Below are positions 25,388 through 61,239 of a DNA stretch of 64,000 bases, piece by piece. Source of the DNA: Oculina patagonica (lineage: Eukaryota); the NCBI RefSeq assembly GCF_052425735.1, contig NC_135762.1, positions 8,308,001 through 8,372,000 on the forward strand, given 5' to 3'. The position numbers and the translations under genes are program-made. Each line of letters begins with the position of its first letter. The first letter of the stretch is position 1. The notes beneath the pieces were generated by a model. It worked only from the letters and a program-made list of their open reading frames with translations. It made no database searches and had not been told where the DNA came from.

Positions 25388-26298
25388 ATGGCAGCCTTTT
25401 CTTTCGCAAGTCTCTTTAAATCTGCAGCCCTGATAACTTTCTTGTTAGTTGCTGTTAGCAATGGGTGTTCTTTGAAGAGTGACTGCTTATTGAACGAAGT
25501 CTGCTGCAACTACAGATGTGTTTACGCATCAAGCTGTGTCGGTCGGCACTGTTTTTCTGATTTTGGTTGTTCTAGCGGGGAAAGTTGTTGTGCTAATGAA
25601 TGTGTTTACGGTTCAAGTTGTGTCAATCAGTCCTGTTCGTATAAATCAGATTGTTCTCCCGGGCAGAGTTGTTGTAATAGTAAATGTGTTTACGGTTCAG
25701 GTTGTGTCGGTCAGTCCTGTTCGTCTGCTTCCGGTTGTTCTATAGGAGAGAGTTGCTGTAACAGCGAATGCAAAGATGGCTACAATTGCGTGGGGTCTTC
25801 TTGTTCATTGAACTCTGATTGCGGAAGTGAAACCTGTTGTAAGGGAAAATGCCGGCCAACGCTCGTACGATGACTGTATTGATTCTACCGCCGCCGTCAT
25901 TGCTGGTGCAGTAATTGGCTCACTCGTTCTCATCTGCGCGATCTCCGTGTGGTTTTTCCACGTTCGCCGACGACAGAGAGCACTTAGTTACGGTAGAGTA
26001 ATAGAAGTTGAGAGAGCAGTAATAACAGCTACTTCCACCACCACGGTTGCAAACATACAGAGCAACCCACCCTTCCCAGGGCAGGAAATTCCACCGTCAT
26101 ACCCATACCACCCACCGCTCGAGCTCCACTTTGAACGTCAGCAACACACGACCAATCCTCCACCATACCACCCTGGAACAACGGCAGCAAGTAAACAGCC
26201 TCCCCCATTACACTGAAGCACCACAGGGAGGATCAGGGGGAGTTGATGCACCTAAAACGTGTTTTCCATCAGCGGCACCTGTTTTGCAACAACACTGA
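25388..26298 (+). pseudogene. Cys-repeat TM PPxY receptor-like gene, copy 1 (5 modules, two frameshifts)
   Basis: 4-bp insertion near 25853 (TGCCGGCCAACG vs TGCCAACG) and 1-bp insertion near 26207; ORFs 25388-25873 and 25827-26216. Confidence 0.88.
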
Positions 26299-26468
26299 GA
26301 AAGCTAAGGAATTCTGTCATGATTTCCTTGCTGGTAACTTAACAGACAAACTAGGAACTTTAACAGACACCGTTTTCTCTGATGTGCTGTAAAAATCGCT
26401 TTGAAGTTTTAATAACAGGCTTTTGCATAATAATAATAGTTTTACAGAAAGGAAGGCGTGTAGTAAAA

Positions 26469-26768
26469 GGGGTCCTGAATAGTCCATCAAAATTCTGCAC
26501 TGCTCGCAAAATTAGGCTTCTGCTTGGAATACTCGCAAAATTTTAGTGGGTGCTCGTTTGCTCATGGTCGCATAATTTTACAAGTGCTCGCATGCTCAGT
26601 TTTCAGTGGAGGTAGCTTTTTGAAATGTGCTCGTTGCTCGCAAGGCTAACTTTTGTCTCTTTTTGTCAATGCCTGTGCTCGCAAAGAAAATCTCTGTGCT
26701 TGCATGCTCGCAAATGCTCTCAAAGACCATCGTGCTCGCAAATGCTCGCAAAGACAATTCGATACCTC
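26469..26768. mobile_element. MITE with TGCTCGCA internal repeats, inserted in the 3' flank of copy 1
   Basis: Interrupts GTAGTAAAACCGGCC, which is contiguous in the paralogs; imperfect TIR. Confidence 0.65.
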
Positions 26769-27149
26769 TTGTAAAACCGGCCGCCGAAACGAAACACGAA
26801 ACGAAACTAACAAGCGAAAGTGAGATAGCGGCTATGAAGTCTATCTAGAGTGCTATTCAGGCTATTCAGGCTAACTGGAGGGCACAGCTTCATTTCGTTC
26901 GGGTTTTATTGTAGGAATATAACGAAGCGTTTTAACAACGCGAAGAAAATTTACACGTAATAAAATTAACCCGAATTTAGGAAAAGTTCCGGTTAGATGC
27001 TTATAATTAACATGTTTAAATAAATAAAATTAACGCGAAGTTTTGAAATTCGCGTTTATGGCATTCATCGTAAATTTCCTATAAGTCTTATTAGTGTCAG
27101 CAATTTCCCTTAGTAGTCGTTTTTAAAACCCTTAATTGACTTAGCTACA

Positions 27150-57627: not shown

Positions 57628-57660
<33 letters not shown>

Positions 57661-57801
57661 TTTTTAGTTAAGTATTTTAAATATTTTTAGCTTAGCATTT
57701 AGTATTTTAGGTATTTTAATTGTGTCCCCAATTAGTCCATAAGGGCTAAACACACAGACACGGTAATAAAGTTTTTATCTTATTATCTTATCTTATCTTA
57801 T
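57628..57801 (+). mobile_element. Short LINE 3' end in the 3' flank of copy 8
   Basis: Interrupts the paralog consensus GACATCATTTCCTCTGAC; poly-T, GTGTCCC..GACAC, AATAAAG, (CTTAT)n. Confidence 0.8.
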
Positions 57802-59768
57802 CTCTGACAAGTACTGTAAAAATCGCTTTGAAGTTTTCATAACAGGTTTTGAACAGTGGCTTTTGCATATATAAATATTCATAGTTCGTTTCTTGGCCCA
57901 CTTGAGCGTGGCATATTTTGTTCGCAAACTACGTTTGGAGACCCCAAGAAAACAAATAGTGCACGACTTAGTAGAAATGTTTGACCAGCCAAATGCCGAG
58001 TTTCATGACTTTCTCTTGAAAGGAAGGCGGGCAGTAAAACCGGCCGCCGAAACGAAGCGAAACGAATCCACCAGAACGGAACTACTGAAAACAAGCGAAA
58101 GTGAGCATTATACAGGCTAAATGGAGTGCTATTCAGGCTAACCGGTGTGCATCGTTCCATTTCGTTATGAAGGCTAAGTTAAGTGCTATTTTCAGGCTAA
58201 CTAGAGTCCACCGTTTCATTTCGTTTCGGCCGGTTTTAGTTCTTATTATAGGAATATAATGACGAAGCATTTTAACAACGCGAACAAAATTTAAGCTTAA
58301 TAAAATTAACACGAATTTAGGAAAAGGTCCTGTTAGATGCTTATAATTAACATGTTTGTAAAAATAACTAAAATTAACGTGAATTTTTGAAATGGTTAAT
58401 AACGCGCATCGTTAATTTCCTAGACAAGTCTCAGTAGTGTCAGAAATCTCGCTATTAAAGTAGTCGTTTTTAAAACCCTCAGTTGACTTAGCTACGTAGC
58501 ATAATAGGAGACAACAAGACATATGTACAAAGTTTAATGTATAAGGTTAAACAAAATTTGTGCTCGCGGATTATTTGTAACATGATTTGACTAACAGCAA
58601 CACTTACAGTTTACGGCAGAGAGATTCGATTCGATATCTAGACCCATGACTCTGGAGCAAGTTATCAAATAAAAAAAGATCGGCCGTCAGTCTTAAACAG
58701 TTCAAGACCCAGATAAGTAGGCTTGATTTAAGTTACATGTTAGATGGATGCAGTGGCTGCTTGATCTTTGCAAGATTACAGGATTTTTCTATATATCATT
58801 TGCAATTTTCTTTCAGATTTATGTTTTTTTTTTGCTTCTATTTCGATTTTATATTCATTTAAGATAGCGTTAGTTTGGTGTCCCCTATTAGCATGCGCAG
58901 TGTGCATTCCACACTGCTAGATGTGACGTCAGATGTAATTGACACAGTAATAAAGTCATTATAATAACTTAACCTGGTAGTGGAAAACTGCACATAATTT
59001 AGTTATTGCTCAATGTTTTTAAAAGGAAATGGTTAAAAAATAAAAGAAAGTATCACAAAAGAAATAACAGGGTCAAAGGATTCCATATATTTTTAATACA
59101 TTCAGTGATTTAACAGGGGCGTAGCCAAGATTTTTTCAGAGGTACGCACAATTTTCTCAGTGATTCGTACTCGATTCCCGCTCCCTTCCTTCCCCTCAAG
59201 TCTTGATTCTTCCTCTTTTTTCACTTGCTTAGTTTTACGCAATAGTGTAAAAAAAAATCAACGCAATAACGTTACAGCTCAATGGATATCGTGACAGTTC
59301 GCGTCTAATAATAAATTAACATGTTAGCTTATCATAGGATAGCGTAACCCACCCTTCGAGCAACTGGACCTTGTCGAAACCGCTTCCTATTAAAGACATA
59401 TAATTGGTAAATAAACTCCTTTAGACGGCTGGTATATTGGAGGATAATGCCCAAGGCTGAAAGATTGTCGAAAAATGAACAGTTGACCGACAATTTTTCA
59501 GCCAAGGTTATTATCCTCCAGTGTATCAGTAAGCCTCCGATTAATTTCTACAACGCGCTTTATCGCCAGTAAATTTAAAGGAAGAAACCTACAGTAATTA
59601 TTGAAACAAATGTAAGTTGATTGGTTTACATCGATGGAAGCATTCATTTGTTATTCATGATTCTTTTAGCCATCTCCGTTATTAAAACACAAAGATTCAT
59701 GATTCCTACCAATTTTACAGCTGTGATTCATGATTCAGCTTCCACCCCCGATCGAGAAAGAGTTAAAT

Positions 59769-61239
59769 ATGGCAGCATTTCCTTTTGCAATGCTCTTCAA
59801 ATACACGGCACTAGTTGCCCTGCTTGCTTTCTCGTTAGTTGCTGTTAGCGATGGGTGTGCTTCCAAGAGTGACTGCGGAGCGAATCAAGTCTGCTGCAAC
59901 TACAGATGTGTTTATGGTTCAAGTTGTGTCAATCGGTCCTGTTCGTCTGATTCTAGTTGTTCAAGCGGGGAGAGTTGTTGTAATAAGAAATGTGTTTACG
60001 GCTCAAGTTGTGTCGGTCAGTCTTGTTCGTCTGATTCCGATTTTACATCTAGCGCGGAGAGTTGTTGTAGACGTTAATGCCTTTCCATTCCAAGTTGTGT
60101 CGGCCGTTACTGTTCGACTGATTCCGATTACACCCCTCTGTAACAGACCCAGTGGAATCTTTATCTTCACCGGGTTTTCGGAAAAAAGTCACTGGGTTGG
60201 CCAATTTCACACCGGGTCGGCTTATTTGTGCTGGTTTTTTTTAATTGGTTTATTCGACAAAACACACACTCGCACAGTCACTGGGGAAGCATGGAAATAG
60301 ACAGGTAAAATCAAAATATTCGCTGGGTACCTAAGAGACTAAATTTCCACTGGGTAGGGGAAAATAATCCACTGGGTCGGGTTCCACTGGGTCTGTTACA
60401 GAGGGGTGTACGATTGTTCAAGCGGAGAGAGTTGTTGTAGACGTTCATGCGTTTCCATTTCAAACTGTGTCGGCCTGTACTGTTCGACTGATGACGATTG
60501 TTCAAGTGGGGAGAGTTGTTGTAATAGTGAATGTGTCTACGCATCAAGCTGTGTCGGTCAGTCTTGTTCGTCTTATTCTGATTGTTCTAACGGGGAGATC
60601 GAGAGTTGCTGTAGCCGTTTATGCCTTTCCAGGTCAACTTGTGTCGGTCAGTACTGTTCGTCTGATTCCGATTGTTCTAGCGGGGAGAGTTGCTGTAACG
60701 GCGAATGCAAATATAGCTCCGATTGTTTTGGGTATTCGTGTTCCTCCAACTCTGATTGCGGAAGTTGGGAAAGCTGTTGTAACGGAAAATGCCAATACTC
60801 GAGCGATGATTGTATTGATTCTACCGCCGCCGTCATTGCTGGTGCAGTTATTGGCTCCCTCGTTTTCATCTGCGCGATCTCCATGTGTATTTTCTTCGTT
60901 CACCGACGGCAGAGAACAATTCGTTACGGCAGAGTAATAGAAGGACAGAGAGTAACAGCAACTACTGTCACCACCGCTGGTGCAAATGTACAGAGCAACC
61001 CACCCCACCCTGGGCAGGTAATTCCACCGTCCTACAGCTACCCATACTACCCCCCGCTCCAGTTTGAACATCAGCAACACACGATTAATCCTCCACCATA
61101 CAACCCTGGAACAATGGCAGCAAGTGAACAGCCTCCCCCTTACACTGAAGTACCACAGGGAGGATCAGGGGGAGTTGATGCTCCTAAAACGTCTTTTCCA
61201 TCAGCGGCACCTGTCTTGCAACAACACTGGGAAAGCTAA
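59769..61239 (+). pseudogene. Cys-repeat TM PPxY receptor-like gene, copy 9 (8 modules; premature TAA and MITE insertion)
   Basis: ATG 59769; TAA 60075-60077; MITE 60129-60410; the downstream half is open to 61239. Confidence 0.9.
60129..60410. mobile_element. MITE inserted in the coding region of copy 9
   Basis: Perfect TIR TACACCCCTCTGTAACAGACCCAGTGGAA; CGAT duplicated (60125-60128, 60411-60414); removing it restores CSTDSDC. Confidence 0.93.

What the first reader, a model, noticed from the sequence alone, without database searches (positions are those of the whole stretch)
25388..61239. Tandem array of nine intronless Cys-repeat / TM / PPxY receptor-like genes: candidate undescribed variable receptor family
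Seen: nine same-strand copies share a signal peptide, tandem 28-aa modules C-x5-C-x5-CC-x3-C-x5-C-x4, one TM helix, a poly-Arg stop-transfer and a conserved ~110-aa tail. Module number is 5, 6, fragment, 5, 5, 5, 5, 6 and 8 across the copies. Known: a Cys-rich ectodomain with TM and PY tail recalls Shisa-like/WBP1/VOPP1/CYYR1 proteins, but those typically have a single Cys domain. Inference: birth-and-death evolution with a variable ectodomain on a conserved signalling tail is typical of innate-immune, allorecognition or symbiont-recognition receptors. I do not recognise this family.
Basis: partly seen in the sequence, partly recalled or inferred. Interest (0 to 1): 0.9.

Follow-up and report, generated by a model that had tools for sequence, protein, structure and literature searches.

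The report
Coral knottin-repeat PPxY membrane protein array
A stony coral (Oculina patagonica) carries a recent tandem array of single-exon genes for membrane proteins with a string of small disulfide-knotted modules outside the cell and three PPxY ubiquitin-ligase docking motifs inside; the family is real, uncharacterised and shared with sea anemones, but looks more like a multi-module relative of Shisa/WBP1/CYYR1-type adaptors than an immune receptor.

Summary
Nine same-strand copies lie at 25388-61239 with module counts 5, 6, fragment, 5, 5, 5, 5, 6, 8. Only six are intact ORFs, and copies 4 and 5 encode identical proteins. Copy 1 has two frameshifts, copy 3 is a tail stub, and copy 9 carries a stop codon and a 278-bp MITE.

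The genome is Oculina patagonica. It has at least 72 matching pieces, including a larger cluster at C5:5.02-5.19 Mb. Relatives occur in Porites, Montipora, Desmophyllum and the anemone Actinia (hhalign 99.8%).

The usual module count is 3. AlphaFold2 models each 28-aa module confidently as a turn plus hairpin. The nearest solved folds are knottins and the Dkk N-terminal domain, but these matches are weak. The WAP and DPY sequence hits fall below threshold.

The tail is disordered and keeps three PPxY motifs. The architecture and language-model neighbours (shisa-5-like, CYYR1, WBP1, VOPP1) point to STMC6-type NEDD4 adaptors. Profile-level membership is not shown.

The tail's higher conservation goes with lower dS and a mosaic copy 6, which points to gene conversion. 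dN/dS is similar in ectodomain and tail. No signalling domain, expression data or haplotype data support the immune-receptor reading.

Two sibling notes on this window agree with these findings.

The parts
25388..26295 (+). Copy 1: pseudogene with 5 modules, TM and tail, broken by two frameshifting insertions (~25851-25858, 4 bp; ~26207, 1 bp)
33278..34282 (+). Copy 2: intact single-ORF gene, 334 aa from the ATG, 6 modules, TM, three PPxY (34076-34087, 34142-34153, 34184-34195)
35497..35667 (+). Copy 3: tail-only fragment (matches aa 245-299 of copy 7) at the left edge of the 4.06-kb tandem unit
35497..48887 (+). About three tandem units of ~4.06 kb (35497-44788 aligns to 39572-48887 at 95.7%). 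These generated copies 4, 5 and the 5' part of copy 6
38830..39744 (+). Copy 4: intact, 304 aa, 5 modules
42891..43805 (+). Copy 5: intact, protein identical to copy 4 (very recent duplicate, or possibly an assembly duplicate)
46948..47859 (+). Copy 6: intact, 303 aa, 5 modules. Mosaic: the 5' end is nearest copies 4/7, 47071-47165 is nearest copy 1, and the tail 47573-47924 is nearest copy 2
49628..50527 (+). Copy 7: intact, 299 aa (P0004), 5 modules; this is the copy that was modelled
49628..49705 (+). Copy 7 signal peptide (aa 1-26, hydrophobic core, ends ...AVSDG)
   Evidence: (helix 6-19), sequence
49706..50116 (+). Copy 7 ectodomain: five 6-Cys modules, pLDDT ~90, each a short turn plus beta-hairpin
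50132..50203 (+). Copy 7 TM core (aa 169-189) followed by RRR stop-transfer (aa 190-192)
50321..50440 (+). Copy 7 tail segment holding PPSY (50321-50332), PPLY (50387-50398) and PPPY (50429-50440); predicted disordered
56538..57545 (+). Copy 8: intact, 335 aa, 6 modules (the first is degenerate), RRRRR stop-transfer
59769..61239 (+). Copy 9: 8 modules, interrupted by TAA at 60075-60077 and a MITE. NCBI model LOC144654023 (P0005, 377 aa) removes 60067-60403 as an intron; no RNA evidence is available
60131..60408 (.). 278-bp MITE with perfect 25-bp terminal inverted repeats and TA target-site duplication, inserted inside module 4 of copy 9

Best explanation
The locus is a young, lineage-specific tandem expansion in Oculina patagonica. 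It holds six intact genes and three broken ones. The family is uncharacterised, has a single coding exon and occurs in both stony corals and sea anemones.

Each protein is a type I membrane protein with four parts. First comes a signal peptide. Then comes a rigid, acidic, Ser/Gly-rich ectodomain built from tandem 28-aa, three-disulfide, knottin-like modules (2 to 12 or more across the family; 5-8 here). One TM helix with a poly-Arg stop-transfer follows. The last part is a disordered Pro/Tyr-rich cytoplasmic tail of about 110 aa with three PPxY motifs.

In design the proteins correspond to STMC6-type transmembrane adaptors (Shisa/Scotin, WBP1, VOPP1, CYYR1, TMEM92), with the single 6-Cys domain multiplied.

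The most likely mechanism is inferred, not shown. The PPxY motifs would dock WW domains of NEDD4-family HECT ligases, which this genome encodes. This would couple whatever the ectodomain contacts at the cell surface or in the endosome lumen to ubiquitin-dependent sorting or degradation, or would regulate the ligases themselves.

The array itself evolves by unequal crossing-over of a 4.06-kb unit, by gain and loss of 84-bp modules, by gene conversion and by pseudogenisation.
For: Architecture:
- ORFs, modules, TM and PPxY motifs are shown.
- In the AF2 model the ectodomain has pLDDT ~90, there is a TM helix at 166-197, and the tail has pLDDT below 50.
- The two-module model has pLDDT 87.5.

Constraint:
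- 30 of 30 Cys columns are invariant among five distinct paralogs, against 39 of 105 non-Cys ectodomain columns.
- All three PPxY motifs are kept, with changes only at x (PPAY, PPLY).
- The C-terminal PPPY is invariant or nearly so in 28- and 43-sequence family alignments.

Age:
- Actinia tenebrosa has a member. hhalign gives 99.8%, E 5.7e-30, over modules, TM and tail.
- 277 clusters at 50% identity match at E<=1e-10.

Link to STMC6:
- The nearest ESM-Atlas clusters are shisa-5-like (Cnidaria, 0.89), CYYR1, WBP1-like, Shisa5 and VOPP1, for the whole protein and for residues 135-299.
- One paralog tail (P0138) passes Pfam CYYR1 at 35.7 bits against a cut-off of 31.
- WBP-1 hits are sub-threshold but span the profile.
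- Tails also hit the PY-motif adaptor families RCR (10 of 43) and Comm (4 of 43).
- TMEM92 is a weak fold neighbour of the last module, TM and tail.

Literature:
- CYYR1 binds WWP1/WWP2/ITCH through its three PPxY motifs. STMC6 proteins are proposed NEDD4 adaptors (PMC11399591, PMC6125347, PMC5037681).

Ligase presence:
- A gene with four WW domains plus HECT lies at C4:27.898-27.912 Mb.

Array dynamics.
Against: - No binding, localisation or expression evidence exists. The complex prediction of a coral WW exon with the tail gave no verdict.
- Profile-level homology to STMC6 families is not established. 0 of 71 scanned members match CYYR1 in whole-protein scans.
- hhalign against coral WBP1-like proteins gives only 61% probability over 34 PY-region columns.
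- The Atlas scores are below 0.9 and count as leads only. Similarity of Pro/Tyr-rich tails can be compositional or convergent.
- dN/dS of 0.4-1.1 across both ectodomain and tail within the array fits weak constraint on these young copies.
- The ectodomain ligand is unknown.
Confidence: 0.5

Rival explanations
1. Variable innate-immune, allorecognition or symbiont-recognition receptors. Diversified knottin arrays would recognise non-self ligands and the conserved tail would signal or trigger uptake.
For: - Tandem expansion with pseudogenes and fragments.
- Module number varies from 2 to 12 or more.
- 63% of non-Cys ectodomain positions differ among five paralogs on an invariant Cys scaffold.
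- Non-Cys ectodomain dN/dS is 0.56-1.50, above 1 in some pairs.
- One contig in a public run joins 56481 to 59752 and skips copy 8, a hint of copy-number variation.
- This reading is not exclusive of PPxY-driven endocytosis.
Against: - No TIR, Death, ITAM/ITIM, kinase or other signalling domain was found.
- dN/dS is not consistently above 1 and does not differ from the tail. The tail's conservation is explained by lower dS and gene conversion.
- The loops follow a strong S/G/D/E-rich consensus with few hydrophobic residues.
- The modal form in other corals is a short 3-module protein, and the family predates the coral-anemone split.
- No expression or population data exist.
Confidence: 0.17
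2. Membrane-anchored WAP-like protease inhibitors or antimicrobial proteins. The modules would be degenerate whey-acidic-protein domains acting on microbial or host proteases at the epithelial surface.
For: - 27 of 28 family members give WAP (PF00095) hits. The best is E 2.1e-6, and a few members carry precomputed WAP annotations.
- The module contains the C-x-x-[DN]-x-x-C-x5-CC core.
- One AFDB neighbour is named 'WAP domain-containing protein'.
Against: - The window copies score 12.8-18.6 bits, below the 20.8 cut-off.
- Matches cover only profile positions 11-40 of 41. Each module has 6 Cys, not 8, so it lacks the first two Cys of the four-disulfide core.
- Predicted-structure neighbours are knottins and the Dkk N-terminal domain. 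No WAP structure appears in any list.
- A PPxY tail is not a feature of WAP inhibitors.
Confidence: 0.08
3. A structural spacer or matrix-facing surface protein. The acidic, Ser-rich, disulfide-stiffened repeat array would act as a stalk or adhesive element of variable length (as DPY/EGF arrays do in Dumpy), possibly glycosylated, with the tail only controlling turnover.
For: - The ectodomain has pI 4.1-5.2, with 20-27% Ser, 21% Cys and ~10% Gly. The module consensus is strong.
- The nearest solved sequence is the Dumpy DPY module (1oig, E 0.016; Pfam Dumpy_DPY 15-20 bits).
- Length varies by whole modules.
- Fold neighbours include Dictyostelium and Polysphondylium Cys-repeat adhesion glycoproteins.
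Against: - All these matches are below threshold.
- The ectodomains are short (130-170 aa).
- No matrix or adhesion domain is present.
- D+E content is only moderately high.
- The reading does not explain why three PPxY motifs are so strictly kept.
Confidence: 0.12
4. A largely decaying, functionless recent duplication. The window copies would be drifting towards pseudogenes, with any function residing in older family members elsewhere.
For: - 3 of 9 copies are broken.
- Roughly 10 of 24 module-bearing ORFs in the 5-Mb cluster are partial.
- Pairwise dN/dS is 0.4-1.1 in both halves.
- No transcript evidence was found.
Against: - Six ORFs of 299-335 codons remain open.
- 30 of 30 Cys columns and all PPxY prolines and tyrosines are invariant, while a third or more of other positions changed.
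- About 400 bp of upstream sequence is conserved among copies 4, 5, 6 and 7.
Confidence: 0.08

Closest known systems
STMC6 transmembrane adaptors (Shisa/Scotin, WBP1, WBP1L, VOPP1, CYYR1, TMEM92)
   Same: - Signal peptide, a six-Cys extracellular domain next to a single TM helix, and a disordered Pro-rich tail with several PPxY motifs. CYYR1 also has three (PMC11399591).
- The nearest language-model clusters are all of this group.
- One paralog tail passes Pfam CYYR1.
   Different: - The 6-Cys unit is a 28-aa module repeated 2 to 12 or more times instead of a single domain.
- Its predicted fold and motif resemble knottin, Dkk_N or DPY rather than any Shisa_N or WBP-1 profile.
- There is no consistent profile match.
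- The coral has a separate canonical WBP1-like gene at C2:3.63 Mb with a different Cys pattern (C..C..CC..CC).
- The family forms large tandem arrays.
Other PY-motif membrane adaptors of NEDD4/Rsp5 ligases (Commissureless/PRRG4, yeast Rcr1/2, NDFIP)
   Same: A short TM protein whose cytoplasmic tail carries PPxY/LPxY motifs. Sub-threshold Pfam hits to RCR (10 of 43 members, best 5.2e-5) and Comm (4 of 43, best 4.6e-4) cover the TM helix plus tail.
   Different: All these hits are below the curated cut-offs and probably reflect motif and composition similarity. Those proteins lack a Cys-repeat ectodomain.
Dickkopf N-terminal cysteine-rich domain / DUF7107 / EB module / knottins
   Same: - The C-C-CC-C-C framework with loop lengths 5, 5, 0, 3, 5.
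- The two-module model's best match is the Dkk4 N-terminal domain. Foldseek gives probability 0.90, TM 0.60 and 56 columns; VIA gives Z 2.8 over 50 aligned residues.
- Single modules superpose on EETI-II/MCTI-A at 0.4-1.2 A over 20-25 residues.
- AFDB and Atlas neighbours carry EB, DUF7107 or Dickkopf_N.
   Different: - All matches are statistically weak (E>0.2, Z<3).
- The disulfide connectivity is unknown.
- Those proteins are secreted or have other architectures, and none has the TM helix plus PPxY tail.
WAP four-disulfide core domain (PF00095)
   Same: The C-x-x-[DN]-x-x-C-x5-CC-x3-C core motif, with weak Pfam hits in nearly all members.
   Different: Six Cys instead of eight. Only the C-terminal three-quarters of the profile aligns, the window copies score below the cut-off, and no WAP structure is among the fold neighbours.
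Drosophila Dumpy DPY module (PF21164, PDB 1oig)
   Same: A local motif, C-x-L-N-S-D-C-x-S-x-x-x-C-x-N-x-K-C. It is the best PDB sequence hit (E 0.016) and superposes at rmsd 1.2 A over 21 residues.
   Different: Sub-threshold (15-20 bits against 27). DPY modules alternate with EGF domains in a giant ZP-domain matrix protein, and the CC doublet is absent.

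Membership tests
STMC6 superfamily (Shisa-like/WBP1/VOPP1/CYYR1/TMEM92) | Single-pass type I membrane protein with N-terminal signal peptide | tested here: met
   Hydrophobic N-terminus and one predicted TM helix (residues 166-197) followed by RRR
STMC6 superfamily (Shisa-like/WBP1/VOPP1/CYYR1/TMEM92) | Extracellular domain with six conserved cysteines next to the membrane (definition as quoted in PMC6125347 and PMC5037681) | tested here: inconclusive
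   A 6-Cys module ends 5-10 residues before the TM helix and its Cys are invariant. It is one of 2 to 12 or more tandem modules, and no profile links it to Shisa_N or to the WBP-1 Cys domain
STMC6 superfamily (Shisa-like/WBP1/VOPP1/CYYR1/TMEM92) | Pro-rich cytoplasmic region with PPxY motifs | tested here: met
   Three PPxY motifs per intact copy, spaced 22 and 14 residues apart; tail is 16-19% Pro
STMC6 superfamily (Shisa-like/WBP1/VOPP1/CYYR1/TMEM92) | PPxY-dependent binding to WW domains of NEDD4-family ligases or WWOX | not testable with these tools
   The complex prediction gave no verdict; biochemistry is needed
CYYR1 (PF10873) | Score above Pfam gathering cut-off (31 bits) | tested here: inconclusive
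   One paralog tail (P0138, from the 5-Mb cluster) scores 35.7 bits over profile positions 52-144 of 149. None of 71 other members scanned matches at E<=0.1-10. A genome-wide scan found nothing
WBP-1 (PF11669) | Score above cut-off (28.1 bits) or a profile-profile match | tested here: not met
   Best scores are 13.8-15.5 bits. hhalign against coral WBP1-like proteins gives 61% probability over 34 PY-region columns only
WAP four-disulfide core (PF00095) | Eight cysteines forming four disulfides; full-length profile match above 20.8 bits | tested here: not met
   Six Cys per module. Window copies score 12.8-18.6 bits and align to profile positions 11-40 of 41. A few distant members pass
Inhibitor cystine knot (knottin) | C-C-CC-C-C framework with loop lengths in the knottin range | tested here: met
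   Loops of 5, 5, 0, 3 and 5 residues in 19 canonical modules. The range limits come from established knowledge, not from a tool
Inhibitor cystine knot (knottin) | Knotted I-IV, II-V, III-VI disulfide connectivity | not testable with these tools
Fold matches to knottins are weak: rmsd 0.4-1.2 A over 20-25 residues, E>2, Z 2.0-2.5
Dumpy DPY module (PF21164) | Score above cut-off (27 bits) | tested here: not met
   15.4-20.2 bits; 1oig E 0.016

The most novel reading that the evidence does not exclude
Anthozoans may possess a previously unrecognised class of surface receptors. In this class, a modular and rapidly reshuffled array of knottin-like units would recognise external ligands such as microbes, symbionts or conspecific tissue. 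Recognition would be coupled directly, through three PPxY motifs, to NEDD4-family ubiquitin ligases for ligand-triggered endocytosis. That would be a recognition-to-uptake pathway with no counterpart among known innate immune receptors. The Oculina array would be an ongoing diversification of it.
Probability: 0.13. Interest if true: 0.8.

Novelty: new variant of a known kind. Interest (0 to 1): 0.45.

Why it matters
If the PPxY-adaptor reading is right, corals and anemones have expanded a branch of the Shisa/WBP1/CYYR1-like adaptor design into dozens of genes. The ectodomains of these genes are built by multiplying a three-disulfide module.

Such adaptors decide which membrane proteins are ubiquitinated and removed from the surface. 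A large, fast-evolving set in a symbiotic, calcifying animal could therefore shape receptor turnover during symbiont uptake, infection or stress.

Oculina patagonica is a classic bleaching and Vibrio-infection model, so the genes are experimentally reachable.

The array is also a compact example of gene birth and death. It shows unequal crossing-over of a 4.06-kb unit, gain and loss of 84-bp modules, gene conversion, frameshift decay, and a MITE that a gene model treats as an intron.

If the proteins turn out to be ordinary turnover adaptors or spacers, the finding is a well-described lineage-specific family of modest interest.

Tried and rejected
- RNA evidence. Two run searches listed no RNA holder. 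The four runs laid are contig sets that also cover intergenic DNA, so they behave as DNA and say nothing about transcription or about the copy 9 'intron'.
- Logan contigs carrying a homolog (P0017) span a neighbouring divergent ORF and have no poly(A). They give no transcript evidence either.
- Complex prediction of a coral NEDD4-like WW exon (L056) with the copy 7 tail scored 0.08, which is no verdict. It is not evidence either way.
- VIA-align of the whole model matched only the TM helix and was uninformative.
- Foldseek against PDB with the whole model gave no hit at E<=0.001.
- The genome-wide CYYR1 HMM scan found nothing, but it also missed the paralog that passes in a single-protein scan, so it is uninformative.
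- Pei & Grishin 2012, the STMC6 source paper, is not held. The definition was taken from papers that cite it.
- Literature searches for a prior description of this coral family found none.
- A galaxin or coral acid-rich skeletal protein reading was considered and dropped. The proteins are membrane-anchored, only moderately acidic, and present in a non-calcifying anemone.
- The antisense ORFs at 39142-39612 and 43203-43673, and the off-frame ORFs at 59839-60300 and 60467-60937, are by-products of the repeat composition.

Full report
OBSERVATION

The window is G000:C5:8308001-8372000 of a 529-Mb genome. Named identical or near-identical proteins identify the organism as the scleractinian coral Oculina patagonica.

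ORF listing, a six-frame regex scan and tblastn confirm nine same-strand loci between 25388 and 61239. They carry the motif C-x5-C-x5-CC-x3-C-x5-C. No such module occurs anywhere else in the 64 kb or on the minus strand.

- Copy 1 has a 4-bp and a 1-bp insertion that shift the frame.
- Copy 3 is the last ~57 codons of a tail.
- Copy 9 has an in-frame TAA (60075-60077) and a 278-bp MITE with perfect 25-bp inverted ends and a TA target duplication (60131-60408) inside a module.
- NCBI's model for copy 9 (P0005, LOC144654023) removes both defects as an intron. I place it at 60067-60403 by matching the model to the DNA.

Copies 4 and 5 encode identical proteins, and about 3.5 kb around them differs at three bases. 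A self-alignment shows a 4.06-kb tandem unit: 35497-44788 aligns to 39572-48887 at 95.7%. Its left edge is the copy 3 stub. A rhodopsin-type GPCR gene sits inside the array on the other strand (29197-30345; Pfam 7tm_1, E 5.6e-38).

THE PROTEIN

Each intact copy encodes 299-335 aa, with these parts:

- a signal peptide
- five or six 28-aa modules
- a TM helix
- RRR(Q/H)R
- a 108-112-aa tail with PPSY, PP(P/A/L)Y and PPPY, spaced 22 and 14 residues apart

AlphaFold2 with a 28-sequence alignment models the ectodomain at pLDDT ~90. Each module is a short turn plus a beta-hairpin. The TM helix lies at residues 166-197, and the tail is disordered with pLDDT below 50. A two-module model has pLDDT 87.5.

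The ectodomain is acidic (pI 4.1-5.2), with 21% Cys, 20-27% Ser and ~10% Gly. The modules follow a strong consensus close to CSSDSDCSSGESCCNSECVYGSSCVGQS.

WHAT THE MODULE IS

By sequence it gives only sub-threshold Pfam hits:

- WAP: 12.8-18.6 bits against a cut-off of 20.8, covering profile positions 11-40 of 41. The module therefore lacks the first two of WAP's eight Cys.
- Dumpy_DPY: 15-20 bits against 27.
- DUF7107.

The best PDB sequence hit is the Dumpy DPY module (1oig, E 0.016).

By predicted structure no significant PDB hit exists.

- Single modules superpose on knottins (MCTI-A, EETI-II, spider and cone-snail toxins, a sea anemone toxin) at 0.4-1.2 A over 20-25 residues.
- The two-module unit's best match is the Dkk4 N-terminal cysteine-rich domain. 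Foldseek gives probability 0.90 and TM 0.60. VIA gives Z 2.8 with 50 residues aligned.
- All 12 VIA hits with Z>=2 are Dkk4, knottin toxins or inhibitors, or a carboxypeptidase inhibitor. None is a WAP domain.
- AFDB and Atlas neighbours beyond cnidarians carry EB, DUF7107 or Dickkopf_N domains.

I therefore call it a knottin-like, three-disulfide module with a WAP/DPY-like core motif. The disulfide connectivity is not determined.

THE FAMILY

The O. patagonica genome holds at least 72 matching pieces.

- A larger same-strand cluster lies at C5:5.02-5.19 Mb. It has 24 module-bearing ORFs of 120 aa or more, of which 14 look intact, with 2-7 modules.
- Single copies lie on other chromosomes.

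A profile search of 1.84 billion representative proteins finds 937 hits at E<=1e-3, 277 at E<=1e-10 and 84 at E<=1e-30.

Named members come from Porites lutea, P. evermanni, Montipora capricornis, M. foliosa, Desmophyllum pertusum and the sea anemone Actinia tenebrosa. The Actinia protein aligns over modules, TM helix and tail at hhalign 99.8%, E 5.7e-30. The family therefore predates the coral-anemone split.

The top AFDB fold-cluster hits are uncharacterised proteins whose accessions I recall, unverified, as Actinia, Paramuricea and Pocillopora.

Among 173 proteins with the full architecture, the modal module count is 3 and the range is 1 to 12 or more.

Many members were called as single ORFs on metagenome or run contigs, so the single-exon coding structure is family-wide.

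No source gives any member a functional name, and no paper describing the family was found.

THE TAIL AND THE CLOSEST KNOWN KIND

The C-terminal PPPY is invariant or nearly so across 28 and 43 diverse members.

- Whole-protein Pfam scans hit TM-plus-PY-tail families below threshold: RCR (10 of 43), Comm (4 of 43) and Cadherin_C_2 (5 of 43).
- One paralog tail (P0138) passes CYYR1 at 35.7 bits against a cut-off of 31.
- WBP-1 hits at 14-15 bits span the profile.
- ESM-Atlas feature searches return only STMC6-type clusters as nearest named neighbours: shisa-5-like (Cnidaria, 0.89), CYYR1, WBP1-like, Shisa5 and VOPP1. This holds for the whole protein and for residues 135-299. All scores are below 0.9, so they are leads only.
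- TMEM92 is a weak fold neighbour of the last module, TM helix and tail.

A direct profile-profile test was also run. A 126-sequence alignment of the last module, TM helix and tail was compared with coral WBP1-like proteins (P0262-P0268, retrieved from a canonical WBP1-like gene at C2:3.63 Mb). It gives only 61% probability over 34 PY-region columns.

The family therefore shares the STMC6 design but is not shown to be a member of any STMC6 Pfam family. The STMC6 design is defined in PMC6125347 and PMC5037681. CYYR1's three PPxY motifs bind WWP1/WWP2/ITCH (PMC11399591).

The genome encodes NEDD4-type ligases, for example four WW domains plus HECT at C4:27.898-27.912 Mb. A complex prediction of one WW exon with the tail gave no verdict.

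EVOLUTION OF THE ARRAY

On the last two modules plus TM helix and tail, the six window copies form a clade with 100/99 support. Copy 9 is sister to the rest. The clade nests among Oculina paralogs of the 5-Mb cluster. Older 5-Mb lineages pair with sequences from other corals. Gene conversion could inflate the apparent monophyly.

Among the five distinct intact copies:

- 30 of 30 Cys columns are invariant.
- 39 of 105 non-Cys ectodomain columns are invariant.
- 72 of 108 tail columns are invariant.

The scaffold and the PPxY motifs are therefore under constraint.

Pairwise Nei-Gojobori estimates:

| Region | dN/dS | dS |
|---|---|---|
| Ectodomain, all sites | 0.46-1.11 | 0.14-0.52 |
| Ectodomain, non-Cys sites | 0.56-1.50 | not given |
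| Tail | 0.39-1.13 | 0.07-0.20 |

The tail's higher identity thus owes much to homogenisation.

Consistent with that, copy 6 is a mosaic. This agrees with the scan's sibling note s1-281650.

- Its 5' end is closest to copies 4 and 7 (95-100%).
- 47071-47165 is closest to copy 1 (95%).
- Its tail is closest to copy 2 (95-98%).

The sibling note s1-281625 says that the three PPxY motifs are kept, with changes only at x. That is also confirmed.

INTERPRETATION

Shown:

- the architecture
- the family's breadth and age
- constraint on the Cys scaffold and on the PPxY motifs
- the array dynamics

Inferred:

- that the PPxY motifs recruit NEDD4-family ligases as in CYYR1, WBP1L and VOPP1
- that the ectodomain contacts a surface or luminal partner

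The immune or allorecognition reading is not excluded. It has no positive support beyond tandem expansion and loop variability. The loops are low-complexity and consensus-like, and no signalling domain is present.

Expression could not be assessed.

I rate the family as a new variant of a known kind: a multi-module, knottin-array version of STMC6-like PY adaptors. Interest is moderate.

Noticed in passing
window 29197-30345 (-): An intronless rhodopsin-family GPCR gene (382 aa; Pfam 7tm_1, E 5.6e-38) is embedded between copies 1 and 2 on the opposite strand.
   Followed up: partly
window 14575-18374 (+): A retroelement made of consecutive ORFs. One is a 603-aa ORF with a reverse-transcriptase domain (RVT_1, E 2.7e-11). 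The downstream 142-aa and 249-aa ORFs look like a DIRS/Ngaro-type recombinase region by eye, but have no Pfam hit. GC rises to 0.46-0.48 here.
   Followed up: partly
window 3861-5436 (+): Ser/Thr/Glu-rich, mucin-like ORFs (154 aa and 356 aa). The second ends in a Lys-rich stretch followed by a hydrophobic TM-like segment. There is no Pfam hit; it is possibly an exon of a larger gene.
   Followed up: no
window 60131-60408: A 278-bp MITE with perfect 25-bp terminal inverted repeats (CACCCCTCTGTAACAGACCCAGTGG) and a TA target duplication. It is the only copy in the window. In public runs its depth is much higher than that of the flanking DNA, so it is a multi-copy element in the genome.
   Followed up: partly
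G000:C5:5020001-5200000 (L038-L055): A second, larger same-strand cluster of the family. It has 24 module-bearing ORFs of 120 aa or more, 14 of which look intact, with 2-7 modules. NCBI models there include fused and out-of-frame predictions (P0006, P0007, P0138).
   Followed up: partly
window 34610-35186, 35990-36569, 40085-40630, 44146-44691, 48212-48787: A ~580-bp intergenic element recurs downstream of several copies at 87-96% identity. It is part of the duplication unit or a dispersed repeat.
   Followed up: no
window 56481 -> 59752: One contig in public run X1 joins the region just upstream of copy 8 to the region just upstream of copy 9, skipping 3270 bases with 33 other letters in between. 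This may be a haplotype lacking copy 8, or a paralog chimera.
   Followed up: no
G000:C2:3625728-3625979 (L037): The coral's canonical WBP1/VOPP1-like gene (Pfam WBP-1, 36.2 bits). It is multi-exon, has LPSY and PPPY motifs, and has orthologs named 'WW domain binding protein 1-like' in Acropora and Montipora.
   Followed up: partly
window copies 2, 4-8, juxtamembrane (e.g. 50204-50240 in copy 7): All window copies have SYGR(V/M)I or NYGRVI about 5-10 residues after the poly-Arg, which fits a YxxPhi sorting-signal pattern. Most family members elsewhere have H or R instead of Y (HHGRVI, RHGRVI). The Tyr may therefore be a gain in this clade, though it also appears in a few other members.
   Followed up: no
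family tails (alignment A1, columns ~470-500): Most non-window members carry QQGYPYYPPPQY. This resembles the PYP...YP type-1-like ALG-2-binding motif reported in Scotin/SHISA5 (PMC5037681). The window clade has PPSYP(Y/C)HPPLE instead.
   Followed up: no
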